Below the pieces are notes generated by a model. The model searched no databases. It saw nothing but the letters and a program-made list of their open reading frames with translations, and had not been told where the DNA came from. A stretch of 64,000 nt of DNA from positions 62,001 to 126,000 of IMG/VR virus record IMGVR_UViG_3300012988_000016. One strand, given 5' to 3'. Shown piece by piece: positions 34,153 to 50,188 of the stretch. Numbering within the stretch: position 1 is the first letter of the stretch; every line of letters begins with the position of its first letter. The translations under genes and the position numbers were made by a program.

Positions 34153-34158
34153 GGTGTA
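34153..34158 (+). promoter_or_regulatory. GGTGTA motif upstream of the SNF2 helicase gene
   Basis: 10 nt before ATG 34169; one of eight similarly placed copies. Confidence 0.6.
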
Positions 34159-38973: not shown

Positions 38974-39397
38974 GCTACCCACTAGAGAGATGGGGGACGT
39001 CAGGCTGTTGGTAATCGAACAGCAGCCTGACGGCTCTTGGGAAGATGAATGGGAGCTCCTTAGGAAAACCCCATTCGGTGCACAATTCAGCGTAATCTCC
39101 AAAGAGGTGCTGGATCATGCGTTGTACCGATTGTCCCGCCCATTGGTAGACGCCTTGGGGATCCCTCCGGCGGGAGCGTTGAAGAAAATACCGAAAGCCT
39201 CGAAAGAATGTTTTCGACGTGAACGGTGCATCTACCACGATAGCAAGAATTGCCATCCTGAAGGCAAGCAAATGCCGTGGTGTTACGAGCCTGACGGTGT
39301 AGAAGGTGAAGAGATCCGTCAAACGGCCACGAGGGCAATTCAGGAGTGGCGTGATGGGGTCTATTTGGTTGTGATTCAAGAGGATCAAGATGTCTGA
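38945..39397 (+). CDS. hypothetical Cys-cluster protein
   Basis: 150 aa; CFRRERC...C...WC; overlaps both neighbours. Confidence 0.65.
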   Translation: MTVSVVRRLKLPTREMGDVRLLVIEQQPDGSWEDEWELLRKTPFGAQFSVISKEVLDHALYRLSRPLVDALGIPPAGALKKIPKASKECFRRERCIYHDSKNCHPEGKQMPWCYEPDGVEGEEIRQTATRAIQEWRDGVYLVVIQEDQDV

Positions 39398-42197
39398 AGA
39401 CATAGATTTCGACGATATTGAGAGTTCACTGGGTAGTGTCCCCCAGGTAGCATTGACTGCAAAAAACACTAAAACGACCGTCATTGAGGGAGATGACCTG
39501 GAGTTCTTTGCTGAGAATTCCGGCATCAAATCCGATGATGTGGCGGCCTCCGAAGACTTGACCAAGCCGTGGATGAAATTCCACCAGTTCGTGCTGGTCA
39601 AGACCCCTGAGCAGGTGACCGAAATAGTTAATCAGATGCTAGCCCATGGCAGAGGCAGCATCGATCTTGAGACTGAGGGGTTGGACAACCGTATCTACTA
39701 CGATGAGGCAGATAAGCCCTACACGGTCCACAAGATCGTCGGTTTCTGTCTAGGTTACAGAGGGATTGGGCATTACATCCCTGTTCGACACAACTTCAAG
39801 ACCATCTATGGGGAGACAGACCCCAATGTCAATGTCGAGCATGTGGAGGCCGAAATACGTCGCCTGTGCCAAGCTAGTCAGCCGGTCCTGACTGAGGAGG
39901 GCTTGGCCGAGGATGCCTTGTCGTCCAACAAAATGGCAACACCCCCTAGGATTGTCTTGTATTTCTGGAACTCTAAGTTCGATCAAGAGTTCCTATTCCC
40001 GATCACTGGGATCGATTGGTGGCACCCAAATTCGTTCAAAGATGGGATGCTGGCTGCCTACACCGTCTATTCAGACGACGTGTTGAGCTTGAAAGAGAAG
40101 GCTTTCGAAAGGCTTTCGATCGAAGATCCAGAGCATAAGACGGACGGTAAACCCACCCTCCATCGTTATGAGATGATCAAGTTCAAGGAGCTGTTTCCCA
40201 AGGGCACGCCTAACAAGGAGATGCGGTTCGCAGATCTGTATCCGGAAGAGGGAAGCGCGGTTGTCAAGTACGCTTGCTCGGATGCGATCTGCACCGAGGC
40301 CTTGTGTGAGACCAAGCCTGATTGGCTGCTGGCTAGACCAGACCTGAAGGTGCACTTTCAGGAAGTGGAGTCCGCCACTGAGGATAAGAAATACGCTTTC
40401 ACCTACCGGCTAGAGAAGCAGACCACTCAAGCTGGTAGGGTGATGGAACGCCCGAGGGTGAAGATCGACAAGAAGAAGATCGTCGATCTGCTCAAACGTG
40501 CTGAAGAGGAACGGGAGAAGTACGACAACCTTATCCGAGCGATGGCGGAGAAACGGGGGTTTAAAGACTTCAATACAGGCTCTACCAAGCAACTGTCAGA
40601 CTTCCTCTTCTCTGCTGACGGTCTAAACATTAGCCCCAAGCCAGAGATGAATGCTGCCAGTGGTCAGTACAAGACCGATGCGGCCACTCTTGAGAAGATG
40701 CTGGAAGCCGACGATGCTCCAGAGGTGTTGGTCTGGATCGTGAAGTATCGCCAAATAGACAAAATCATCGGTACCTACCTGGCCAGCATGGCGGCCAATT
40801 GTGATGCCAATGACGAGCTCAGGTTCGGTTTCAATCAGACTGGGGCTGCTACTGGACGCTTCACCGCATCCGCGGGTCAGCCTGAGCAAGGTTACTCAGG
40901 CATTCCGATCCACGGCATTCCTGCTAGGAGCGACCCGAAGAAGCCTGAGGTGGCCCACTCACTCCGTCAGGCTTTCGTAGCACGGCCTGGATACACGATA
41001 GTGAAGGTCGACTACGCCGGCCAAGAGTTGCGGGTGGTTACCAACATCTCTGGGGAGAAGGTGTGGGTTGAAGAATTCATCCATGGGTCAGGAGATTTGC
41101 ACACCATCACCGCCAAGGCTTTCTTCGGACAACACATCACCAAGGAAGACAAGATTGAACGAGCGGCCGGCAAAGTGGCCAATTTTGCCCTGATTTACGG
41201 GGGTGGCCCGTCGGCCATCATGCGTGCAACCAAGTGCGATAAGGTGGAAGCGGCTCGTAGGAAGGCCAACTTCGACAAGTCGGTACCTACCTTTGCTGGA
41301 TGGGTCAAGAATCAGCACCAGTTGGTGAAGAAGACCAAAGGGGTGACGACCGCCTTTGGCCGTTTCATCGCCATTCCAGACGCTGCCGTGAAGACTGGGG
41401 ACTTGGACCCCAAAGGAGTGCCCTACACGGAGCAAGACGCTAGGAAGATTGCCGCCGCCTGTGAGCGAAAATCAACCAACTTCCCTATCCAAGGGTCGGG
41501 CGCCGACATCATGAAGATCAGCATGGTCAAGTTGGTGAAGGAATTTACCAAGTACGGCTGGTTGCGTAATGGTGGGGACGATAGCGTCCGGATGCTGATG
41601 ACAGTGCACGATGAAATTGTGTTCGAGATTCGTCATGACCGGCTCACTCAGGCAGTCCCAATCATCATCGAAATAATGGAATTCCCCAGCCGGATGGTCA
41701 GGTGGCAGGTTCCGTTGATTGTGGAACCGTTGATCAGCCAGACTTGGGAAGCCAAGATTGATTGGCATGAGGTTCAAAACGGCAAGAAACCGGTTCCTGA
41801 TTGGTTGGAAGGGATATTGGTCCCAGGGCAGCATCAATCGCCTGAGATGGTCCCTCACAAGACCTCTCAACCTGAGCAGGGGGGCCAATCTTCCAAGCCC
41901 TCCCCCCTTCAAGAATCTGGGCCTCACAACCCTACGAAAGGCACCCTTCCGGTCTACATCTTCGCCTTGAGCGACGCATTCCTTACCCGCCGATCGGTAG
42001 ACCTGGTGTTTGAAGCGGTTGCAGCCTCAATAGAACCGGACAGCAGGGTGTTCCTTTGCCTAAAAGATGCGTCAGATAACGTCTTGATTGACCCAACCAA
42101 GCGGAAAATACCAATCAATCCAAAGACATTCTCGATGAAGCTCAAGGACAAGAACTTGGGGTCTGGGGATTACCTGTACAAGGAAGAGCCCTTATAA
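39390..42197 (+). CDS. polA: family A DNA polymerase with 3'-5' exonuclease domain and C-terminal extension
   Basis: Exo motifs IDLETEG, WNSKFD, YACSDA; ATGRFT; motif A VDYAGQELR; motif B KVANFALIYG (Phe at the E. coli 762-equivalent position); motif C TVHDE. Confidence 0.95.
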   Translation: MSEDIDFDDIESSLGSVPQVALTAKNTKTTVIEGDDLEFFAENSGIKSDDVAASEDLTKPWMKFHQFVLVKTPEQVTEIVNQMLAHGRGSIDLETEGLDNRIYYDEADKPYTVHKIVGFCLGYRGIGHYIPVRHNFKTIYGETDPNVNVEHVEAEIRRLCQASQPVLTEEGLAEDALSSNKMATPPRIVLYFWNSKFDQEFLFPITGIDWWHPNSFKDGMLAAYTVYSDDVLSLKEKAFERLSIEDPEHKTDGKPTLHRYEMIKFKELFPKGTPNKEMRFADLYPEEGSAVVKYACSDAICTEALCETKPDWLLARPDLKVHFQEVESATEDKKYAFTYRLEKQTTQAGRVMERPRVKIDKKKIVDLLKRAEEEREKYDNLIRAMAEKRGFKDFNTGSTKQLSDFLFSADGLNISPKPEMNAASGQYKTDAATLEKMLEADDAPEVLVWIVKYRQIDKIIGTYLASMAANCDANDELRFGFNQTGAATGRFTASAGQPEQGYSGIPIHGIPARSDPKKPEVAHSLRQAFVARPGYTIVKVDYAGQELRVVTNISGEKVWVEEFIHGSGDLHTITAKAFFGQHITKEDKIERAAGKVANFALIYGGGPSAIMRATKCDKVEAARRKANFDKSVPTFAGWVKNQHQLVKKTKGVTTAFGRFIAIPDAAVKTGDLDPKGVPYTEQDARKIAAACERKSTNFPIQGSGADIMKISMVKLVKEFTKYGWLRNGGDDSVRMLMTVHDEIVFEIRHDRLTQAVPIIIEIMEFPSRMVRWQVPLIVEPLISQTWEAKIDWHEVQNGKKPVPDWLEGILVPGQHQSPEMVPHKTSQPEQGGQSSKPSPLQESGPHNPTKGTLPVYIFALSDAFLTRRSVDLVFEAVAASIEPDSRVFLCLKDASDNVLIDPTKRKIPINPKTFSMKLKDKNLGSGDYLYKEEPL

Positions 42198-42214: not shown

Positions 42215-42796
42215 ATGAAACGTCGAGACGTCCTCCAAGAATGTGTTCTTGAGCAGTTGATTCCTGCTCAAGAGGTATTGTCCAATTGGTGTCATCGTTG
42301 CATAAATCCTGAATGCACACGAAGCCAACACGGGACAACCAAGTTTGATGACCGAGTCCTTCATTGGGAGGAGCGTCTTTTCCTAAATCCAGCTAAACTG
42401 GAACCTTCCGATCCTCGTTATCAAGAGATAGCTTCCAAGCGATTTCTGACGGTTGTCCCTGGCACTCCTAGCGCTCCTGGTGAGTGGTTAGACCCCAGGG
42501 TAGATCGTCCGGAACCGAAGATGGTACAGGTTCCAGTTCAGCTCACCCCGCCTGCTTTCGCGCCTCAGGCGGCACTCCCTCAAGAGGTGGCACCTACCCC
42601 TACCCCTACCCCTCAAATACCCAGCAATCCGTCTGTTGTTCGAAATACTCCCGCCAGGCCTCAACAAATGATCGGGGAAGCCCCCCAAACGATGCCCTCC
42701 TCGGTGTCTGATCCTTGGGCACAGAAGTCCGTCCCAGCCAGCCCGGGAGACCAGGTGGTCAAGCCTGGTGTCAAGATCAAACTTGGCGGACAATGA
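42215..42796 (+). CDS. hypothetical protein, Cys motif plus Pro-rich tail
   Basis: 193 aa; WCHRCINPEC; preceded by TAAAAT at 42195-42200. Confidence 0.7.
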   Translation: MKRRDVLQECVLEQLIPAQEVLSNWCHRCINPECTRSQHGTTKFDDRVLHWEERLFLNPAKLEPSDPRYQEIASKRFLTVVPGTPSAPGEWLDPRVDRPEPKMVQVPVQLTPPAFAPQAALPQEVAPTPTPTPQIPSNPSVVRNTPARPQQMIGEAPQTMPSSVSDPWAQKSVPASPGDQVVKPGVKIKLGGQ

Positions 42797-42805
42797 ATCC
42801 GCAGC

Positions 42806-42816
42806 TATAATAGGAG
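42806..42816 (+). promoter_or_regulatory. TATAAT -10-like box abutting AGGAG RBS
   Basis: TATAAT at 42806-42811, AGGAG at 42812-42816, ATG at 42822. Confidence 0.5.
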
Positions 42817-42821
42817 CCATC

Positions 42822-42989
42822 ATGAAATTCGAAGTTTTGATTCACTTGGACGGTCGTCGTGAGCATGTTGTGACAGAGCGTGCTGAGGGCGAGAATTGCG
42901 ATAGGATTTTCCAGTACAACGCGGGGACGATGGTCTCTGACGAGCGTACCGGTCCCGATTGCGACACGGTCCAAGAAATCACCACCTGA
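42822..42989 (+). CDS. DUF2997-like small protein (55 aa)
   Basis: MKFEVLIHLDGRREHVVTERAEGENC...: the I..DG.V...V....G..C pattern of DUF2997; upstream of DUF1257-like and Ycf46-like genes. Confidence 0.7.
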   Translation: MKFEVLIHLDGRREHVVTERAEGENCDRIFQYNAGTMVSDERTGPDCDTVQEITT

Positions 42990-43023
42990 TCAGTCAAGAA
43001 ATTCACAAGGAAAGGATACCTAC

Positions 43024-43356
43024 ATGTCTCACAAGGTGACGTTTACGTCGACATTCACAAATCCGGATTTGGTCGCTTCTGCCCTGACCCTCTCCAAGTA
43101 CTCCTTCGATCGCAATGGGAACAATTTCCGCATCACAAGCGGTCCGTTCAGCAATGCTACGATCGATGCTGATACGGGAACCATCACGGGCGATTCGGAC
43201 TACAAGAATCACAAGTCCGAAGCCTTCGCTGCCTTCCGTCAAACGTACAGCGAAGCTGAATTCGTCACCAAGGCGAAGCAGACGGGCGTCGACATCGAGA
43301 GTCGTGAGGTGCTCAAGAATGGCACCATTCGCCTCCGTTGCGCTACGTTGGGCTGA
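43024..43356 (+). CDS. DUF1257 / Ycf35-like protein (110 aa)
   Basis: Starts MSH.VTF.S.F.N.DL...AL; ITGDSDY...FRQTYSEAEFVTKAKQTG..IES.E.LKNGTIRL fits the DUF1257 pattern; AAGGA RBS. Confidence 0.75.
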   Translation: MSHKVTFTSTFTNPDLVASALTLSKYSFDRNGNNFRITSGPFSNATIDADTGTITGDSDYKNHKSEAFAAFRQTYSEAEFVTKAKQTGVDIESREVLKNGTIRLRCATLG

Positions 43357-43379
43357 TCTGAGTTAGCCCAGGCACTTGC

Positions 43380-43415
43380 AAACGGGCTCTATCCTTTGAG
43401 GATGGGGCCCGTTTT
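43380..43415 (+). terminator. intrinsic terminator
   Basis: 15-bp stem AAACGGGCTCTATCC / GGATGGGGCCCGTTT (two G-U pairs) running into a T tract after the DUF1257-like gene. Confidence 0.8.
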
Positions 43416-43426
43416 GCTTCCATCTT

Positions 43427-43432
43427 GGTGTA
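43427..43432 (+). promoter_or_regulatory. GGTGTA motif upstream of the AAA ATPase gene
   Basis: 12 nt before ATG 43445, directly after the terminator. Confidence 0.6.
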
Positions 43433-43444
43433 GAGGATAGAATC

Positions 43445-45010
43445 ATGAACGAAGACCTGAAGTTCCATCTGCGATCAATCACTCGATTCATCTACTTCGT
43501 CACTGACGAAGAAGACCTCTTCATCGAAGACATGAAGAAATCGCTTGAAGACCTCAAACAGCAGACTTTCGTCTACAACAGTGCCTTTGGGTTGCAGCCG
43601 ATCAAGAATGTGACGGACGATTGGAGGCTCAGAAGCCATAATACGGACGATAAGACCGAGAACATTCAGGCGGCACTGACGAAGATCTATACTGATGATC
43701 CGATGCAGTTCCGTAACTTCTACATCATCACCGATCCAGATCGTTGGTTGAAAGAGGAGTATCTGGTCCGCCGATTCCTCAACATCGCCCACCAGCTGAC
43801 CAGTGATGACAAGAACATCAAGATCCTGATTTTCGTTGGACCCCGACTGGTGATCCCTCAGAAGCTTCGCCGATACATTGAAGTGGTGCACGACAAGGGG
43901 ATGGCTGAAGAGCAGACGACAGAGATCCTGCAGAACATCTGCACACATTTGGAAATGCCTTTGCCAGATGTACGCCCTTTCAAAGGGCTGACCAGGTACG
44001 AGATCGATGCTGCGGTGGCGCAAAGCGTGATCAAGAATCGAGTCAAAGACCCAACCAAGAAGGTCGTTTTTTCCAAGGACATTTTGGATTACAAGCGACG
44101 TCAACTTAAGAAGACAGATCTGCTAGAATACCAGGATACGACGGGATTCACGTTCGATGCTTTGGGGGGTGCGGATCGCTTCAAAGCTTGGGCCATGGAG
44201 ACCAAAGACGCTTGGACTGAAGAAGGGCAGGCGTTCGGACTTACTCCGCCGAGAGGTGTCCTGTTGGCTGGCATCTGGGGATGTGGCAAATCCCTTGCCG
44301 TCAAGGCATTGGCCAACGCCTGGGGTTTGCAGGTTGTTCGTTTGGAACTGGGCAAACTTCGTAGCAGCGGCGTGGGCGATTCAGAAGCCAATGTCTACAA
44401 GGCGTTGCATTTGATCGAAGCGGTCGCCCCCTGTGTGGTGATGATCGATGAAGCTGAGAAGTCTCTCTCTGGAGCAGCCTCATCGGCTCAAACTGATTCA
44501 GGAACCACTAGCCGCATGTTGGCTAGCCTGTCGACTTGGATTCAAGAAACCAATGCGCCAGTATGCCTGGCATTGACGGCCAATACCCTCAATGGTTTGC
44601 CGACCGAGATCATCAATCGTATGGACGAACGCTTCTTCTTCGATCTGCCAACTGAAGATGAGCGAATGGATATTCTCAAGATCCATCTGCGAAAGACCAA
44701 GCAAGACCTGAAGCGATTCAACTTCGCCATCCTGGCTGAGGCGGCCAACAACCTGGTTGGTCGAGAGATCGAACAAGCCATCAGAGCTGCTATGCGGCGT
44801 TCGTACAACCTCCAGAAGGAAAGCCTGGATCCGGAAGTCTTGTTGGATCAGTTGAAGACCAAACCTCGTTTGCTCAGGACAATGGGGGATGCGGTCAAGG
44901 AATTGCTCGATTGGGTTGGCTTCGATCCTGAGGTTGGGGAAGGCGTGCGGGCCAAGTTCGCCTCTTCTGACAGGGTTAAGATGTTTTCAGGTCGTGTCAA
45001 AAATGACTGA
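43445..45010 (+). CDS. Ycf46-like AAA+ ATPase
   Basis: Degenerate N-terminal AAA-like domain; PRGVLLAGIWGCGKS; APCVVMIDEAEK; DSGTTSRML; TAN..LP.E...MDERFFFDLP; LVGREIEQA. Confidence 0.88.
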   Translation: MNEDLKFHLRSITRFIYFVTDEEDLFIEDMKKSLEDLKQQTFVYNSAFGLQPIKNVTDDWRLRSHNTDDKTENIQAALTKIYTDDPMQFRNFYIITDPDRWLKEEYLVRRFLNIAHQLTSDDKNIKILIFVGPRLVIPQKLRRYIEVVHDKGMAEEQTTEILQNICTHLEMPLPDVRPFKGLTRYEIDAAVAQSVIKNRVKDPTKKVVFSKDILDYKRRQLKKTDLLEYQDTTGFTFDALGGADRFKAWAMETKDAWTEEGQAFGLTPPRGVLLAGIWGCGKSLAVKALANAWGLQVVRLELGKLRSSGVGDSEANVYKALHLIEAVAPCVVMIDEAEKSLSGAASSAQTDSGTTSRMLASLSTWIQETNAPVCLALTANTLNGLPTEIINRMDERFFFDLPTEDERMDILKIHLRKTKQDLKRFNFAILAEAANNLVGREIEQAIRAAMRRSYNLQKESLDPEVLLDQLKTKPRLLRTMGDAVKELLDWVGFDPEVGEGVRAKFASSDRVKMFSGRVKND

Positions 45011-46172
45011 TGATCTGGCAAAGGTCGAATATGGGGGTCTGGTACAAAGACTGGACCCCCAGGTTCTCACCAAAGCAAATCCTGAACCGGTAGACTTGCT
45101 CCAAGCAAGAGCCGATATTCAGAGAGATGCCCCTTTACAACAGATCTTCAGAGACTCTGTCACTGAGCAGTGGCCAGAGGGGCGGCTGGAATCAGAAGTG
45201 ACGTCTGCCCTCAAGAAGCTTTGGCCCTCAGGAGACCCAACCGAAGCAGCTCAATATCTGGCGGACGAATATCGTCAGTTGGGTGAGGGTCTGCACCTCA
45301 TTTCCACTGAGACGGGAAAGGTTCTGATAGCCTTCAAAGAGGAAGATCTGTACCAACCTTCTATGGTGCCTCGTACAGATGGGACGATGGCTACCCCTTT
45401 GCCAAAGATTCGCCCTGACTTGATGTCCGCGTTGGTGACCTGGCAGCATGAGCGGGCTAGCGAAAAGGTTGTCCTGAGGCAATTGGCCGAAAAAGGGTGT
45501 CAGACCGAGCTGTTGCGGGAGCTGGGCGATCCCAGGCTTCTGGTGGCCTCCAGGGCAGGCCGGAAGCACATCGTCAAGTCCTTGGCTGAGCTGGCTCCAA
45601 GAAGCCTCCTAGAAGCGGCTGGTGGCTCATCCGCCGCTTTCCTGAAGTTGTTCACCCTGGTGGACCAACCTTTCTCGGAAAGTCCTGTCGGATATACGTA
45701 CATCAGAGGTTCCGCCCAAGCTACATCGGTACAGTCGATTGCCGATCTGTCTACCACCAACCTACGGCACAACCGTGTTCAGGCTCTACAAGGGGCGATC
45801 ACCCAAGGTTGGATCCGAGAGATGGCCAGGCAGTTGTCCGATTTCTCTGGTTGGATGGCGCCCGAAGAAGTGACGCTTGATGACCTGGTGTCGCTGCCAG
45901 CCAGCTTTTGGATCCTACCTCCTGATTTGGTCCGGCCATTCCGAAGCCTAGATTCCAAGATTATCGTCTTGGTGGCAGAGAACGCTCGGCCGATGGGACT
46001 GACGGGCCATTTGGGTTACCTCTATGTTCCTGAAATGTTTCAGGCCAAAGACAGGGAATTCTTTAGCCGCTGGGAATCGGTAGCTAGATTGGAATTTGAG
46101 ATGTGGGTCAAGGAAGACGCCCTCAGACCACTGAACGTGACAGGAATGTCCCATGAGGCACATTTGGTCTGA
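45003..46172 (+). CDS. hypothetical protein (389 aa), possibly capsid-fold derived
   Basis: ATG overlaps the end of the ATPase gene; the C-terminal half weakly resembles HK97-type capsid proteins (unverified). Confidence 0.6.
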   Translation: MTDDLAKVEYGGLVQRLDPQVLTKANPEPVDLLQARADIQRDAPLQQIFRDSVTEQWPEGRLESEVTSALKKLWPSGDPTEAAQYLADEYRQLGEGLHLISTETGKVLIAFKEEDLYQPSMVPRTDGTMATPLPKIRPDLMSALVTWQHERASEKVVLRQLAEKGCQTELLRELGDPRLLVASRAGRKHIVKSLAELAPRSLLEAAGGSSAAFLKLFTLVDQPFSESPVGYTYIRGSAQATSVQSIADLSTTNLRHNRVQALQGAITQGWIREMARQLSDFSGWMAPEEVTLDDLVSLPASFWILPPDLVRPFRSLDSKIIVLVAENARPMGLTGHLGYLYVPEMFQAKDREFFSRWESVARLEFEMWVKEDALRPLNVTGMSHEAHLV

Positions 46173-47150: not shown

Positions 47151-47639
47151 ATGCCGATCACATATCTGGAAGGCGATGCCACCTGCCCACAAATAGATGG
47201 CCCTAAGATTATTGCACACGTCGTCAACAGCAGTGGCGGTTGGGGCCGCGGTTTCGTCTTAGCGGTCTCCGACAGATGGTTGGGCCCTGAGCAACGGTAC
47301 CGCAAATGGTATGCCAGCAAGAAGAATTTCAAGTTAGGCGCCGTTCAGACCCTCCAAGTTGAGCCAGACATTTGGGTCTGCAACATGTTGGCTCAAGAGG
47401 GGTATCTGACTACCAAGAAACATGGGCCGCCGCTACGGCTGCCCCGCCTCAAAGAATGTTTGGACCTGTTGAAGGAAGCTGCCATTGAGAGGCATGCTTC
47501 CGTCCATATGCCTCGTATAGGATGCGGATTAGGTGGCTCTGATTGGGATGTGGTCGGCCTGATGGTCGAACAATCTTTGGGTGAAGTGCCGGTCTATGTG
47601 TACGATCTTTATCCTCAATCTGTAGTTCGCCAAACCTGA
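47151..47639 (+). CDS. macrodomain protein (ADP-ribose binding/hydrolase, TARG1/DarG-like class)
   Basis: ITYLEGDAT; IIAHVVNSSGGWGRGF; VHMPRIGCGLGG. Confidence 0.9.
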   Translation: MPITYLEGDATCPQIDGPKIIAHVVNSSGGWGRGFVLAVSDRWLGPEQRYRKWYASKKNFKLGAVQTLQVEPDIWVCNMLAQEGYLTTKKHGPPLRLPRLKECLDLLKEAAIERHASVHMPRIGCGLGGSDWDVVGLMVEQSLGEVPVYVYDLYPQSVVRQT

Positions 47640-47680
47640 CATAGATTGTCCTAGCTGAGGTTGACTCAGATGTGCCGCAC

Positions 47681-47686
47681 GGTGTA
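47681..47686 (+). promoter_or_regulatory. GGTGTA(AGAT) motif upstream of the vWA gene
   Basis: 9 nt before an in-frame ATG at 47696; the SD-led start is at 47780. Confidence 0.6.
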
Positions 47687-47779
47687 AGATGGGGCATGTA
47701 TGATGACGGCACTCCCTTTTGCGCTACCTGTCACTTGGTAGTCGTTGCCTGTTTGTGTGGTCATCCAAAGGAGAATTCA

Positions 47780-50188
47780 ATGGATCCGTTTAGTTACAAA
47801 GTTTCAGACAAGCTCTTTTTGGTCCGTCAAGCGGTCGCTACCGAGAAGCCGAAGACGATCGCTGTAACGCCGCCCACCAACCACGTGATGGTGATCGACT
47901 GCTCCGGCTCAATGTACGGAGAATTGCCGAGGATTCGTGAGCAGTTGAAGAAGAAGCTCCCCAAGTTGCTCAAGGCGGAGGACACCATCAGTATCATCTG
48001 GTTCTCGGGCCGGAGAGAGTGCGGTATCTTGCTCGAAGCAGAGCCGGTCGCAAGCTTGAAGGAGCTACAGACAGTCGAAGCTGCGATTGATCGTTGGCTC
48101 CGGCCAGTCGGCTTGACGGGTTTCAAAGACCCGTTGGAGCTCGTTCCAGGCTTGACGAAGAAGATTTCAGCAGCTCGTCCTAACAGCGTGTTCTCGTTGT
48201 TCTTCATGTCGGACGGTTGCGACAATTGCTCCTCTCGCCCTGAGATCATCAAGGCTGTGGAAGCTGCTGGCCAAAGTGTGGCGTCGGCTACTTTCGTCGA
48301 GTATGGCTACTACGCTGATCGTCAATTGCTGGCTCAGATGGCAGAGAAGGCCGGTGGTTCGACCATCTTTGCTCAAGACTTCGATCAATTCGAGCCAGCC
48401 CTGGAAGCCAGCTTGCTGAAGCGAACCTCTGGCGCCCCCAAGATTGAACTGAAGATCGCAGGCGACGCAATCTGTGGTTTCGCTTTCGGCTTCTCTGGCG
48501 ATGATCTGTTGACCTTCGCAGTAGAAGGCTCGGTCATTCATGTCCCCAAGGATCAGCACGACATCTGGTATCTCTCACCCAACAGTGTAGGGACCCAGGG
48601 TGTCGATCTGTTGACCATTTCGGCCGAAGCGGTGGATCCCAATGTGACGGCTTCCTCAAATGCCGAGGTCATGCATCCAGCCTACGCCGCCATCAGCCTT
48701 TTCGCCAACCGTATGAAGTCGGATGTGGTGTTGGCGACGCTCAAGGCGTTGGGGGATGTGACGTTCATCGAGCAATTCTCGACCTGTTTTGGTAAGCAGA
48801 AATACAGCGAGTTCGTGGCCGCTACCCAAAAGGCGGCTTTTGATCGTAGCGTTCGGTTCACCAACGGCCGAGATCTGAACCGTATTCCGAAGGACGATGC
48901 CTTCACGGTGCTGGATCTGCTTCGTGTCTTGTCGAGTGATGACTCAAATCGCTTGCTACTTGAAAGTAAAGACTTTAGGTACAATCGAATCGGGCGTGGT
49001 CAGATCGATTCCAGTTCGGTCCTGACTGATGAAGAACAAGCCGAGGTGGCCCGCCTGACGGCTGAAATGGCCAAGACCAAAGACAGCAATAAGGTGAAGG
49101 AATTCACTGCAAAGATTGCTGCCATCACGGATGCGAAGGACAAGCCCCTCAAGTTCGACGCCACCCCGATTCCGGATGGTGTCGAGATCAATGGTCTGGT
49201 CTACAACGAAGAACGTCCCAATGTGAGCGTTCGCGTCTTGCGTGGAGGTTCGGTCGACCTGAGCGACCGTTTGGCGAAAGCCGATCAGGCCGTGGCCAGC
49301 AAGATCCCGCACACCTTCCCGACCAACATTTGGCGCAACTACACCCTCATCAAGGACGGCTTGGTCAATGTCGAACGCTTGCCGGTCCGCTTGACGGCTG
49401 GTACGATCCGCACGCTCAAAGCACAAGGGATGCCGATCGAGACCATCTTGGGTGTCGATGGTGAGGATGCTGCCCAGGCTCGCATCCGTGCCGCCAAAGC
49501 GTCTGACGGTCGTGACGTCAGTGTGGTGTTCGACCTCAAGAGTCTGCCGATCATCAATCGCCAGATGATCAAAGAGGCGAGTGCTCAGGTCCTGTTCGAG
49601 AAAGAGTTCGAGCTCTGCAAAGCTCGGGCGGCTCAGAAGGTCTACAAGTGGTACTTGGAGCAAAACTTCAAGAAAGTGTCCAAGGGCCTGGCTGAACAAT
49701 ACGGCACAGAAAGTGCCGACTGGCTCAAAGAACAGGGCATCACGGACGGGGGCTTCAACCCCAAGTCGGTCCAAGCAGAGTCTGTGGACGTCTACATGGG
49801 CAAGGAACTGAAGACCAGCCTCAAGGGTCTCTCTACGATCCCCTCTGTGAACGAGGCCAAGAAGAAGATCGCGGCGGCTGGCAAGCTGACCCCCTCGGTC
49901 TCTTTGCTGGTTCCCTACATTGCTGAAGTGGACGCCTACCTGGCCAGTGCTGAGCACAAGGCTGATGAGGCGGCTTTGGAGAAGTGGCTGGGGGATCGAG
50001 CCAAGCAGGCCACTCAGAAGGTGCGAGGGCTGTTGTTCGAACTCTCCAACATCAAGTTCTCGATCATTGTCGGTCAGATCTGGCCAATTGAGTTCAAATC
50101 TTTGGACGAAAACACCCTCACCATTACGGTGGACGGAAACCAGATCGTAGGGACCTTGGAGCAACGGGAAGTAGAGATCAAGATTTGA
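47780..50188 (+). CDS. large vWA (MIDAS) domain protein
   Basis: AAGGAG RBS; MIDAS VIDCSGSM; LTGF; FFMSDG; ~600-aa uncharacterised C-terminal region; strongly C-ending codons. Confidence 0.85.
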   Translation: MDPFSYKVSDKLFLVRQAVATEKPKTIAVTPPTNHVMVIDCSGSMYGELPRIREQLKKKLPKLLKAEDTISIIWFSGRRECGILLEAEPVASLKELQTVEAAIDRWLRPVGLTGFKDPLELVPGLTKKISAARPNSVFSLFFMSDGCDNCSSRPEIIKAVEAAGQSVASATFVEYGYYADRQLLAQMAEKAGGSTIFAQDFDQFEPALEASLLKRTSGAPKIELKIAGDAICGFAFGFSGDDLLTFAVEGSVIHVPKDQHDIWYLSPNSVGTQGVDLLTISAEAVDPNVTASSNAEVMHPAYAAISLFANRMKSDVVLATLKALGDVTFIEQFSTCFGKQKYSEFVAATQKAAFDRSVRFTNGRDLNRIPKDDAFTVLDLLRVLSSDDSNRLLLESKDFRYNRIGRGQIDSSSVLTDEEQAEVARLTAEMAKTKDSNKVKEFTAKIAAITDAKDKPLKFDATPIPDGVEINGLVYNEERPNVSVRVLRGGSVDLSDRLAKADQAVASKIPHTFPTNIWRNYTLIKDGLVNVERLPVRLTAGTIRTLKAQGMPIETILGVDGEDAAQARIRAAKASDGRDVSVVFDLKSLPIINRQMIKEASAQVLFEKEFELCKARAAQKVYKWYLEQNFKKVSKGLAEQYGTESADWLKEQGITDGGFNPKSVQAESVDVYMGKELKTSLKGLSTIPSVNEAKKKIAAAGKLTPSVSLLVPYIAEVDAYLASAEHKADEAALEKWLGDRAKQATQKVRGLLFELSNIKFSIIVGQIWPIEFKSLDENTLTITVDGNQIVGTLEQREVEIKI

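What the first reader, a model, noticed from the sequence alone, without database searches (positions are those of the whole stretch)
42822..45010. Phage-borne DUF2997 + DUF1257(Ycf35) + Ycf46-type AAA ATPase triad with split transcription
Sequence: three adjacent genes (55, 110, 521 aa). The two small genes have a TATAAT/AGGAG start and a strong terminator (43380-43415); the ATPase then has its own GGTGTA element. Established: DUF1257/Ycf35, DUF2997 and Ycf46-type ATPases commonly co-occur in cyanobacteria, plastids and other bacteria without a defined mechanism. Inference: the phage keeps the whole system but makes the small subunits in excess of the ATPase, consistent with an oligomer or substrate (possibly membrane-associated) remodelled by the ATPase. 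This is the strongest candidate here for an uncharacterised system.
Basis: partly seen in the sequence, partly recalled or inferred. Interest (0 to 1): 0.78.

Follow-up and report, generated by a model that had tools for sequence, protein, structure and literature searches.

The report
Phage DUF2997–DUF1257–Ycf46 ATPase module
A huge soil phage carries, next to its DNA polymerase, a conserved but functionally unknown three-gene set (two small proteins plus a p97-like ATPase) that also occurs in other phages and in bacterial mobile elements, and a hairpin plus a phage-specific upstream motif appear to split it into two transcription units.

Summary
Genes of 55, 110 and 521 aa lie at 42822-42989, 43024-43356 and 43445-45010 on a 309-kb virus record. 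The reported TATAAT/AGGAG start, stable hairpin with U-tract (43378-43419) and GGTGTA (43427-43432) are all present.

Family calls are right but partly indirect. The ATPase is Ycf46-type: Foldseek's top five Swiss-Prot hits are plastid Ycf46, aligned full length. The 110-aa protein is a divergent DUF1257/Ycf35: below the Pfam cutoff, but profile-profile probability is 96% and TM to ycf35 models is 0.8. The 55-aa protein has no Pfam hit of its own; its DUF2997 assignment rests on positional orthologues and weak in-register profile matches.

The three genes are linked in huge phages, 60-kb phages, cultured Pseudomonas, Rhizobium, Rhodobacter and Aeromonas phages, and bacterial genomic islands, in different gene orders. 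This argues for one functional module, usually beside replication genes in phages.

The hairpin-then-GGTGTA spacer is conserved in 13-14 of 15 related phages. GGTGTA is a genome-wide upstream motif, typically 9-10 nt before start codons.

Excess small subunits, binding to the ATPase, and membrane association remain untested or unsupported. Function is unknown. This is a divergent member of a known but uncharacterised module.

The parts
42215..42796 (+). 193-aa Cys-rich / Pro-rich protein. It is the conserved neighbour between PolA and the module in the huge-phage clade and is not part of the triad elsewhere.
   Evidence: no Pfam or PHROG hit
42767..42772 (+). GGTGTC, a one-mismatch copy of the clade's GGTGTA upstream element, 49 nt before the 55-aa gene. 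Relatives carry GGTGTA here.
42783..42811 (+). Sigma-70-like promoter-like site TTGGCG-N17-TATAAT.
   Evidence: 10 of 12 matches; not above chance on its own
42812..42816 (+). Shine-Dalgarno AGGAG of the 55-aa gene.
42822..42989 (+). 55-aa acidic protein, probable divergent DUF2997.
   Evidence: No Pfam hit itself. Orthologue in L014 scores 25.0 bits against a cutoff of 24.1, and L013 scores 22.4. 7 of 18 family members hit PF11211. hhalign E = 9e-4 and 0.009, in register.
43024..43356 (+). 110-aa protein, divergent DUF1257/Ycf35.
   Evidence: Pfam 17.5 bits against a cutoff of 22.2. hhalign probability 96.2%, E = 2e-9 against cellular DUF1257. TM 0.79-0.83 to DUF1257/ycf35 models.
43378..43419 (+). 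G+C-rich hairpin plus U-tract (TTTTGCTT), an intrinsic-terminator-like element after the small-gene pair.
   Evidence: A hairpin is conserved at this position in 13 of 15 related loci although the sequence is not.
43427..43432 (+). GGTGTA upstream element of the ATPase gene, followed by GAGGA at 43433-43437.
   Evidence: Present 9-27 nt before the ATPase ATG in 14 of 15 related loci. Genome-wide motif.
43445..45010 (+). 521-aa Ycf46-type AAA+ ATPase. It has a degenerate D1-like N-domain (about residues 1-230, no P-loop) and an active classical AAA domain: Walker A 276-283, Walker B D335/E336, sensor-1 N380, Arg finger R392. Pore loop 1 is SSGVG, without an aromatic residue.
45003..46172 (+). 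389-aa protein of unknown function. Its ATG overlaps the ATPase stop by 8 nt, and it is conserved directly downstream in the huge-phage clade.
   Evidence: No Pfam, PHROG or PDB match.

Best explanation
This is a divergent copy of a widespread, uncharacterised three-gene module of phages and other mobile elements.

Shown:
- The module combines a Ycf46-type AAA+ ATPase with a DUF1257/Ycf35 protein and a DUF2997 protein. The ATPase has a p97-like tandem architecture with a dead D1 and a live D2.
- The three genes stay linked in several unrelated lineages and in different gene orders.
- In phages the module usually sits beside replication genes (PolA, DnaB, primase, SNF2 or RecA).
- In this huge-phage clade the layout is upstream element - SD - DUF2997 - DUF1257 - hairpin/U-tract - GGTGTA - ATPase - overlapping 389-aa gene.

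Inferred:
- The ATPase forms a ring that uses ATP to remodel a protein or protein-DNA complex early or mid infection.
- The two small proteins form a heterodimer that acts as its adaptor, regulator or substrate.
- The hairpin plus second upstream element let the small pair and the ATPase be expressed at different levels or times.
For: Identity of the parts:
- ATPase: Foldseek's top five Swiss-Prot hits are Ycf46, full length, E = 5e-37 to 8e-33. The next hit is CDC48 at 5e-20, aligned over D1 and D2. Atlas ycf46 clusters score 0.99 by features and TM about 0.8. Walker A/B, sensor-1 and the Arg finger are conserved.
- DUF1257: hhalign 96.2%; AFDB ycf35/DUF1257 TM 0.79-0.83; Atlas TM 0.81.
- DUF2997.

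Linkage:
- All 18 huge-phage loci plus L024 carry the three genes.
- The 60-kb phages carry them.
- Rhizobium phage RHph_I4 is annotated ATPase - hypothetical - DUF1257 - DUF2997.
- Pseudomonas phage SM1 gp026/gp029/gp030 match, and 21 cultured-phage records hold DUF1257.
- 22 of 78 cellular ATPase loci have both small genes, and one never occurs without the other.
- Seeding from DUF2997 in 121 genomes, 9 of the 10 loci that carry DUF1257 next door also have the ATPase directly upstream.
- The triad-linked ATPases fall on one side of a branch.

Context: replication genes lie alongside.

Split architecture. GGTGTA as a genome-wide upstream element: 65 of 200 copies lie in the 7.4% of the genome that is intergenic, and the spacing to start codons peaks at 9-10 nt.

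Leads only: an AFDB entry named DUF2997 whose residues 58-163 match the DUF1257 model may be a natural fusion. In the complex run the DUF1257 score fell to 0.00 with unrelated partners but stayed at 0.52 when the ATPase was replaced (formally no verdict).
Against: - No experiment or transcript data exist for any member, and no RNA run was listed.
- The complex prediction gave no verdict and no sign of a specific ATPase contact.
- The window's 55-aa protein has no direct family match.
- In cyanobacteria the small pair sits with ferredoxin fed7 and ycf46 lies elsewhere (PMC4284462, PMC13683863). The small proteins can therefore work without an adjacent ATPase.
- 56 of 80 cellular relatives of the ATPase lack the small genes within 4 kb.
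- Pore loop 1 lacks the aromatic residue used by threading unfoldases. That argues against a classical unfoldase in this clade.
- The terminator scan did not call the hairpin.
- One relative (L014) has only a 12-nt spacer.
Confidence: 0.55

Rival explanations
1. The hairpin and GGTGTA mark an ordinary operon or timing boundary, not stoichiometric tuning. The small pair and the ATPase belong to different temporal or promoter classes, and the level of the small proteins relative to the ATPase is not the point.
For: GGTGTA precedes about 70 genes genome-wide, mostly non-structural ones. It is absent upstream of the tail/baseplate module genes. Relatives also carry GGTGTA in front of the small pair. 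In other lineages the small genes lie downstream of the ATPase with no such split.
Against: The hairpin-then-motif layout is kept precisely between these two units in 13-14 of 15 loci whose proteins are only about 50-60% identical. The small pair has a canonical SD and a long leader, whereas the ATPase start lies 9-27 nt after the motif. This is compatible with different outputs.
Confidence: 0.4
2. The module is a counter-defence or establishment function of mobile DNA. The ATPase with its small partners dismantles or blocks a host complex, such as a defence or nucleoid protein, when the element enters or replicates.
For: Cellular triads sit in island-like contexts with ArdC-N, RadC, PDDEXK nuclease, DUF87 ATPase, DUF3150, MmeI-type restriction-modification and a transposase. 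The module is spread across unrelated phages and islands. A Macro-like gene and a vWA gene lie downstream in the window, and a VIT-vWA gene lies near the Desulfosarcina triad.
Against: There is no match to a known anti-defence family. The PADLOC hits (IetA, 1e-15) cover only the generic AAA domain, and no IetS-like protease is present. Context evidence is circumstantial.
Confidence: 0.2
3. The small proteins work independently of the ATPase, for example in a redox or metal role as suggested by the cyanobacterial DUF2997-ycf35-fed7 cluster. Adjacency in this phage would be inherited synteny only.
For: The cyanobacterial cluster with ferredoxin has no ATPase (PMC4284462). Conserved Cys and His residues occur in the cellular DUF1257 and DUF2997 alignments. 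The complex run showed no ATPase-specific signal (no verdict).
Against: Linkage to the same ATPase subfamily is kept across at least four phage lineages and many bacterial islands despite rearranged gene order. The Cys/His positions of cellular DUF1257 are not conserved in the phage proteins.
Confidence: 0.15

Closest known systems
Ycf46 (plastid and cyanobacterial 'uncharacterized AAA domain-containing protein ycf46', e.g. P51189 Porphyra purpurea; Synpcc7942_0417)
   Same: About 500 aa. The predicted fold corresponds over the full length (TM 0.66-0.77, 24-28% identity), including the N-terminal degenerate AAA-like domain and the C-terminal classical AAA domain.
   Different: It is phage-borne and adjacent to DUF1257 and DUF2997. 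In S. elongatus, ycf46 lies in its own three-gene operon with a CopG-like gene (PMC13683863). Pore loop 1 here is SSGVG; the Ycf46 proper sequence could not be fetched for comparison.
ATPase-DUF1257-DUF2997 clusters of cultured phages (Rhizobium phage RHph_I4 EVC24_084/086/087; Pseudomonas phage SM1 gp026/029/030) and of Desulfobacterota and other genomic islands
   Same: The three components are homologous, and the ATPases lie on the same side of the tree.
   Different: Gene order is inverted here (small genes first). The small proteins fall below the Pfam cutoffs. A hairpin plus GGTGTA lies between the pair and the ATPase. A 389-aa gene is coupled downstream in place of DUF3150 (hhalign E = 0.19). 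SM1 keeps an aromatic pore loop (SKWVG).
Ycf35/DUF1257 with DUF2997 and ferredoxin Fed7 in cyanobacteria (PMC4284462)
   Same: The same two small families occur as adjacent genes, and the N-terminal MSH motif is shared.
   Different: No ferredoxin is present here. The ATPase is adjacent here but not there.
Type II AAA+ remodellers p97/Cdc48, NVL, Rix7
   Same: The tandem D1-D2 fold aligns over about 550 columns. D2 is the best sequence match.
   Different: There is no N-domain for cofactors, D1 lacks a P-loop, and the D2 pore loop lacks the aromatic residue. Membership in these families is not claimed.

Membership tests
DUF1257 / Ycf35 (PF06868) | Score above the Pfam gathering cutoff (22.2 bits) | tested here: not met
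   17.5 bits, E = 0.005, C-terminal 42 residues only. 8 of 19 phage family members hit at E <= 1, best 2.9e-4.
DUF1257 / Ycf35 (PF06868) | Profile-level homology to members that pass the cutoff | tested here: met
   hhalign of A7 against A5: probability 96.2%, E = 2.1e-9, 105 columns. A5 members pass Pfam.
DUF1257 / Ycf35 (PF06868) | Same predicted fold as ycf35/DUF1257 models | tested here: met
   AF2 model pLDDT 81. AFDB clusters: DUF1257 TM 0.79, ycf35 TM 0.83. Atlas TM 0.81.
DUF2997 (PF11211) | Score above the Pfam gathering cutoff (24.1 bits) | tested here: not met
   No hit for the window protein. The positional orthologue in L014 scores 25.0 bits (passes) and L013 scores 22.4. The 60-kb-phage versions reach 1.5e-8.
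DUF2997 (PF11211) | Profile-level homology to bona fide members | tested here: inconclusive
   Huge-phage profile against the 60-kb-phage profile: E = 9e-4, probability 23%. Against the cellular profile: E = 0.009, probability 4.5%. Both align in the same register. The 60-kb group against the cellular group: probability 95.5%. Atlas found nothing.
DUF2997 (PF11211) | About 50-65 aa, N-terminal beta-hairpin 'I..DG.V', conserved Cys, encoded next to a DUF1257 gene | tested here: met
   Alignment A1: G11, C26 and G35 are conserved across phage groups. Adjacency holds in all loci.
Ycf46-type AAA+ ATPase | Full-length architecture: degenerate N-terminal AAA-like domain plus C-terminal classical AAA, about 500 aa | tested here: met
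   Top five Swiss-Prot Foldseek hits are Ycf46, query 1-508 against hit 1-491. Atlas agrees. PF00004 covers residues 272-400.
Ycf46-type AAA+ ATPase | Catalytic motifs intact (Walker A/B, sensor-1, Arg finger) | tested here: met
   GIWGCGKS 276-283, DE 335-336, N380 and R392 are invariant in A3.
Threading AAA+ unfoldase (p97 D2 / Vps4 type) | Aromatic residue in pore loop 1 (K-[YFW]-x-G) | tested here: not met
   SSGVG in the window. The position is non-aromatic in 39 of 40 triad-linked ATPases in the tree set, against K-[YF]-x-G in 37 of 55 unlinked relatives. Phage SM1 (SKWVG) and L050 (AYIG) are exceptions.
IetAS anti-phage system | IetA ATPase with an adjacent IetS protease | tested here: not met
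   The IetA models match only residues 262-472, the generic AAA domain, far below the NCBIfam cutoff (50.9 against 510 bits). No protease domain is present in the neighbours.
Intrinsic terminator | G+C-rich hairpin directly followed by a U-tract; termination shown | tested here: inconclusive
   The hairpin and TTTTGCTT are present and a hairpin is conserved in relatives. The consensus scan did not list it, and no transcript data exist.

The most novel reading that the evidence does not exclude
The DUF2997-DUF1257 pair is a heterodimeric adaptor or switch for a distinct, non-threading branch of Ycf46-like ATPases. Together they form a replication- or establishment-associated remodelling machine shared by phages and genomic islands. 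In this huge-phage clade it is driven by a previously undescribed GGTGTA-N9-10-start promoter type that yields nearly leaderless mRNAs.
Probability: 0.2. Interest if true: 0.8.

Novelty: new member of a known kind. Interest (0 to 1): 0.55.

Why it matters
Ycf46, Ycf35 and DUF2997 are long-standing 'conserved hypothetical' families of cyanobacteria and plastids with no mechanism. This work shows that the three are a tightly linked, mobile module in many phages and genomic islands. Some of those phages are cultured and genetically tractable (Pseudomonas Samunavirus, Rhodobacter and Rhizobium phages). That gives a direct experimental route to their function.

The module's position beside replication genes, and inteins in some of the ATPase genes, suggest that it matters to the phage. 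The conserved hairpin/GGTGTA layout also gives a first handle on transcription signals of an uncultured clade of 300-475-kb soil phages.

Tried and rejected
- Direct Pfam, NCBIfam, PHROG and PADLOC scans of the small proteins gave nothing above cutoff.
- The word-indexed homologue search with the DUF1257 profile returned only 16 close relatives, none with a Pfam tag.
- PDB sequence searches with profiles of the ATPase N-domain, DUF1257 and the 389-aa protein found no homologue.
- Foldseek of the DUF1257 model against PDB found nothing at E < 0.1. VIA-align's best hit was Z = 7.4, to KA1, AMPK-core and CPSF73/100 C-terminal-like domains. That is within the stated noise range, so it is a lead only.
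- The 389-aa gene was tested as a DUF3150 relative and rejected (hhalign E = 0.19).
- The idea that triad-linked ATPases always lack the pore-loop aromatic was rejected as a rule. Phage SM1 and L050 are exceptions, and the linked ATPases form one branch, so the cases are not independent.
- Membrane association was rejected: the highest 19-residue hydropathy is below 1.5 in all five proteins.
- Three-chain complex prediction gave the formal verdict 'no answer' and is not used as evidence.
- RNA runs: none was listed. DNA of the locus is held in four soil metagenome runs.
- No second copy of any of the three genes exists in the 309-kb record.
- No DUF2997-DUF1257 fusion was found among the 150 representative hits.
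Full report
**Setting.** The window is bases 62001-126000 of a 308,895-bp IMG/VR virus record that CheckV estimates at 65% complete. The identical ATPase also occurs on a 475,623-bp contig, and the DNA is held in four soil metagenome runs. This is therefore a huge soil phage. The first half of the window is a tail/baseplate module (Baseplate_J). The finding lies in a replication block:
- SNF2 helicase (34169)
- DnaB-like helicase (36876)
- primase zinc ribbon (38359)
- PolA (39390-42197)
- a 193-aa Cys-rich protein
- the three genes of the finding
- a 389-aa protein and four small ORFs
- a Macro-like protein (47151)
- a vWA protein

**Observation.** The three ORFs are at 42822-42989 (55 aa), 43024-43356 (110 aa) and 43445-45010 (521 aa).
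- TTGGCG-N17-TATAAT (42783-42811) and AGGAG (42812-42816) precede the first gene. One such site is within chance expectation for the region.
- After the second gene a 13-bp G+C-rich stem with a 3-nt loop (43383-43411, extendable to 43378-43417) is followed by TTTTGCTT. The spacer folds at -38.3 kcal/mol with z = -3.8. The simple terminator scan did not list it.
- GGTGTA sits at 43427-43432, followed by GAGGA and then the ATG at 43445.
A 389-aa gene starts at 45003 and overlaps the ATPase stop by 8 nt. A gene of this size directly follows the ATPase in the related huge phages, overlapping or abutting its stop in most of them.

**The ATPase.**
- Pfam finds one AAA domain at residues 272-400.
- The best solved relatives by sequence are the D2 domains of NSF, p97 and Cdc48.
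- An AlphaFold model (pLDDT 77.8) puts five plastid Ycf46 proteins first in Swiss-Prot. They align over the full length, with E = 5e-37 to 8e-33 and TM 0.66-0.77. The next hit is CDC48 at 5e-20, aligned over D1 plus D2.
- PDB hits are tandem type II AAA proteins: NVL, p97, Rix7. ESM Atlas also gives ycf46 clusters.
- The N-terminal 230 residues are thus a D1-like domain. It has no P-loop; 'IYFVTDEEDRF' stands in its place.
- Walker A (276-283), Walker B (D335/E336), sensor-1 N380 and Arg finger R392 are invariant.
- Pore loop 1 reads SSGVG where p97 D2 and Vps4 have an aromatic residue.
- 'Ycf46-type' is confirmed.

**The 110-aa protein.**
- Its direct Pfam score for DUF1257 is below the cutoff: 17.5 against 22.2 bits.
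- A profile of 15 huge-phage orthologues matches a profile of cellular DUF1257 proteins, which do pass Pfam, at 96.2% probability and E = 2e-9 over 105 columns.
- A full HMMER search of 1.84 billion representatives found 518 relatives. Six of 30 distant ones carry PF06868.
- The AlphaFold model (pLDDT 81) matches AFDB clusters named DUF1257 (TM 0.79) and ycf35 (TM 0.83). Atlas gives TM 0.81.
- No solved structure matches convincingly.
- M1 and S2 are invariant and Y75 is conserved throughout.

**The 55-aa protein.** It has no family hit of its own. The evidence for DUF2997 is indirect:
- It is the positional orthologue of proteins that reach 25.0 bits (L014, above the 24.1 cutoff) and 22.4 bits (L013).
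- The equivalent protein of the 60-kb phages hits PF11211 at up to 1.5e-8 and matches cellular DUF2997 at 95.5% probability.
- The huge-phage profile matches those two groups only weakly (E = 9e-4 and 0.009), but in the same register: 'I..DG.V', the Cys, 'LG'.
- It always lies beside a DUF1257 gene.

My judgement is that membership is probable, at about 0.85.

**Linkage.**
- All huge-phage loci (L001-L018, plus L024, a 205-kb contig binned as a Lysinibacter MAG) show PolA, a roughly 200-aa gene, DUF2997, DUF1257, a spacer, the ATPase and a roughly 390-aa gene.
- A distant group of about 60-kb phages, whose ATPases are 27-30% identical, has DUF1257, one gene, DUF2997 and the ATPase. DnaB, a Toprim primase, a DEAD/SNF2 helicase and RecA follow.
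- Among cultured phages, Rhizobium RHph_I4 is annotated ATPase - hypothetical - DUF1257 - DUF2997. Pseudomonas phage SM1 has gp026, gp029 and gp030, with DnaB at gp036. 21 cultured-phage records hold DUF1257. None is close to the window's own variant.
- Among 80 genome loci retrieved with the ATPase, two are phage-like. 22 of the other 78 have ATPase - DUF1257 - DUF2997, and one small gene never occurs without the other.
- Seeding instead from DUF2997 in 121 genomes of one phylum gave hits in 14 genomes. Of the 12 loci fetched, 10 have DUF1257 next door and 9 have the ATPase directly upstream. The exceptions include a contig end.
- The cellular copies lie in island-like contexts: ArdC-N, RadC, PDDEXK, DUF87, DUF3150, MerR, VIT-vWA, HD, MmeI-type restriction-modification and a transposase.
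- In a FastTree of 95 ATPases the linked ones fall on one side of a branch with support 88.
- Rearranged order with preserved linkage across such distances is the main argument that the three proteins work together.

**Literature.** Only five papers in the library mention either DUF.
- In cyanobacteria the described cluster is DUF2997-ycf35-fed7 (PMC4284462).
- S. elongatus Ycf46 lies in its own three-gene operon, interacts with KaiC and depends on (p)ppGpp (PMC13683863).
- Red-algal plastids tend to lose ycf35 and ycf46 in the same habitats (PMC5940233).
- No paper found describes the three-gene cluster or a mechanism.

**Split transcription.**
- In 14 of 15 related loci the spacer between DUF1257 and the ATPase is 53-142 nt. 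L014 has only 12 nt.
- All 14 contain GGTGTA 9-27 nt before the ATPase ATG.
- 13 have a hairpin of 11-23 bp upstream of the motif (z = -1.8 to -6.8). The hairpin sequences are unrelated to one another.
- Relatives also carry GGTGTA 25-50 nt upstream of the DUF2997 gene, followed by a GGAG Shine-Dalgarno. The window has GGTGTC there (42767-42772).
- In the whole record, 65 of 200 GGTGTA copies lie in the 7.4% of sequence that is intergenic.
- 71 copies lie in sense within 80 nt upstream of an ORF start. The spacing peaks sharply at 9-10 nt (33 cases; 46 within 8-13 nt), usually without a Shine-Dalgarno.
- The spacing is too long for a Shine-Dalgarno-like role of GGUG. It fits a -10-like element giving very short leaders; this is inference.
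- The motif precedes replication-type genes and is not found upstream of the structural genes in the window.
What it achieves (level, timing or both) is untested, and no RNA run was listed.

- The DUF1257 score was 0.47. It was 0.00 with unrelated partners, but 0.52 when the ATPase was replaced.
It is at most a lead that any signal comes from the two small proteins.
- A second lead is an AFDB entry named DUF2997 (228 aa) whose residues 58-163 match the DUF1257 model, a possible natural fusion. I could not fetch it.
- None of the proteins has a hydrophobic segment, so the membrane suggestion has no support.

**Pore loop.** The non-aromatic pore loop is typical of linked ATPases in my sample: S-L-V-G in cellular copies, S-G-V-G in huge phages, S-R-L-G in 60-kb phages. 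Most unlinked relatives have K-[YF]-x-G. It is not a rule, because SM1 has SKWVG and L050 has AYIG. The cases are also not independent, because the linked ATPases form one branch. For this clade it argues against a classical threading unfoldase.

**Verdict.** The module is a divergent member of a widespread but uncharacterised phage and mobile-element gene set.
- Most likely mechanism: a ring-forming, p97-like ATPase with a dead D1 that works with a small DUF2997-DUF1257 pair on a replication- or establishment-related target. The two units are expressed separately.
- The identity of the parts and their linkage are shown. Ring formation, the pairing of the small proteins, the target and the expression ratio are inferred.

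Noticed in passing
G000 whole record; in the window at 34153, 43427, 47132, 47681, 52873, 54062 and 57460: GGTGTA is a genome-wide upstream motif. 65 of 200 copies lie in the 7.4% of the record that is intergenic, and the distance from the motif end to the start codon peaks at 9-10 nt, mostly without a Shine-Dalgarno. It is conserved in relatives whose proteins are only about 50-60% identical. It is probably a promoter type that gives very short leaders.
   Followed up: partly
G000:C1:240130-240150, 259739-259763, 280642-280658 (outside the window): Back-to-back TACACC...GGTGTA pairs lie between divergent genes and look like divergent promoter pairs.
   Followed up: no
window 47672-50188: The listed GTG start at 47672 is probably wrong. 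GGTGTA at 47681-47686 is followed after 9 nt by the ATG at 47696, the modal spacing. The product is an 830-aa vWA-domain protein. A VIT-vWA gene also lies near the Desulfosarcina triad (L106).
   Followed up: partly
window 45003-46172: A 389-aa gene overlaps the ATPase stop by 8 nt. It is conserved directly downstream in the huge-phage clade. It has no Pfam, PHROG or PDB match and is not related to DUF3150.
   Followed up: partly
L018:3500-6445; P0074: Some ATPase orthologues carry an intein: 981 aa in L018, and P0074 with PF14890. Atlas lists a 147-member cluster of AAA plus intein, mostly viral. This hints that the gene is important to these phages.
   Followed up: no
window 42215-42796: A 193-aa protein with a CxxC...C motif and a Pro-rich tail is conserved between PolA and the module in all huge-phage relatives. 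No family match.
   Followed up: no
L024 (JBBAQX010000001.1, 205 kb, binned as Lysinibacter sp. MAG): This contig carries the huge-phage-type module with the same hairpin/GGTGTA spacer. It is probably a phage contig binned with an actinobacterial MAG, and so possibly a host hint.
   Followed up: no
L106:10286-11158; L108:10288-11169: DUF3150 directly follows DUF2997 in cellular triads. ArdC-N, RadC, a PDDEXK nuclease, DUF87, MerR, HD and MmeI-type restriction-modification lie nearby, a mobile-island context.
   Followed up: partly
P0257 (3490 aa): A giant protein matches positions 37-91 of the DUF1257 profile in 14 separate stretches. This may be a repeat with the 'TG.I.GD.D' motif or a low-complexity artefact.
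   Followed up: no
AFDB cluster A0A7C1WI43: A 228-aa protein named DUF2997 aligns over its residues 58-163 with the DUF1257 model. This may be a natural DUF2997-DUF1257 fusion. The sequence could not be fetched.
   Followed up: no
window 47151-47639: A 162-aa protein has a sub-threshold Macro-domain match (17.9 against 22 bits) and is preceded by GGTGTA.
   Followed up: no
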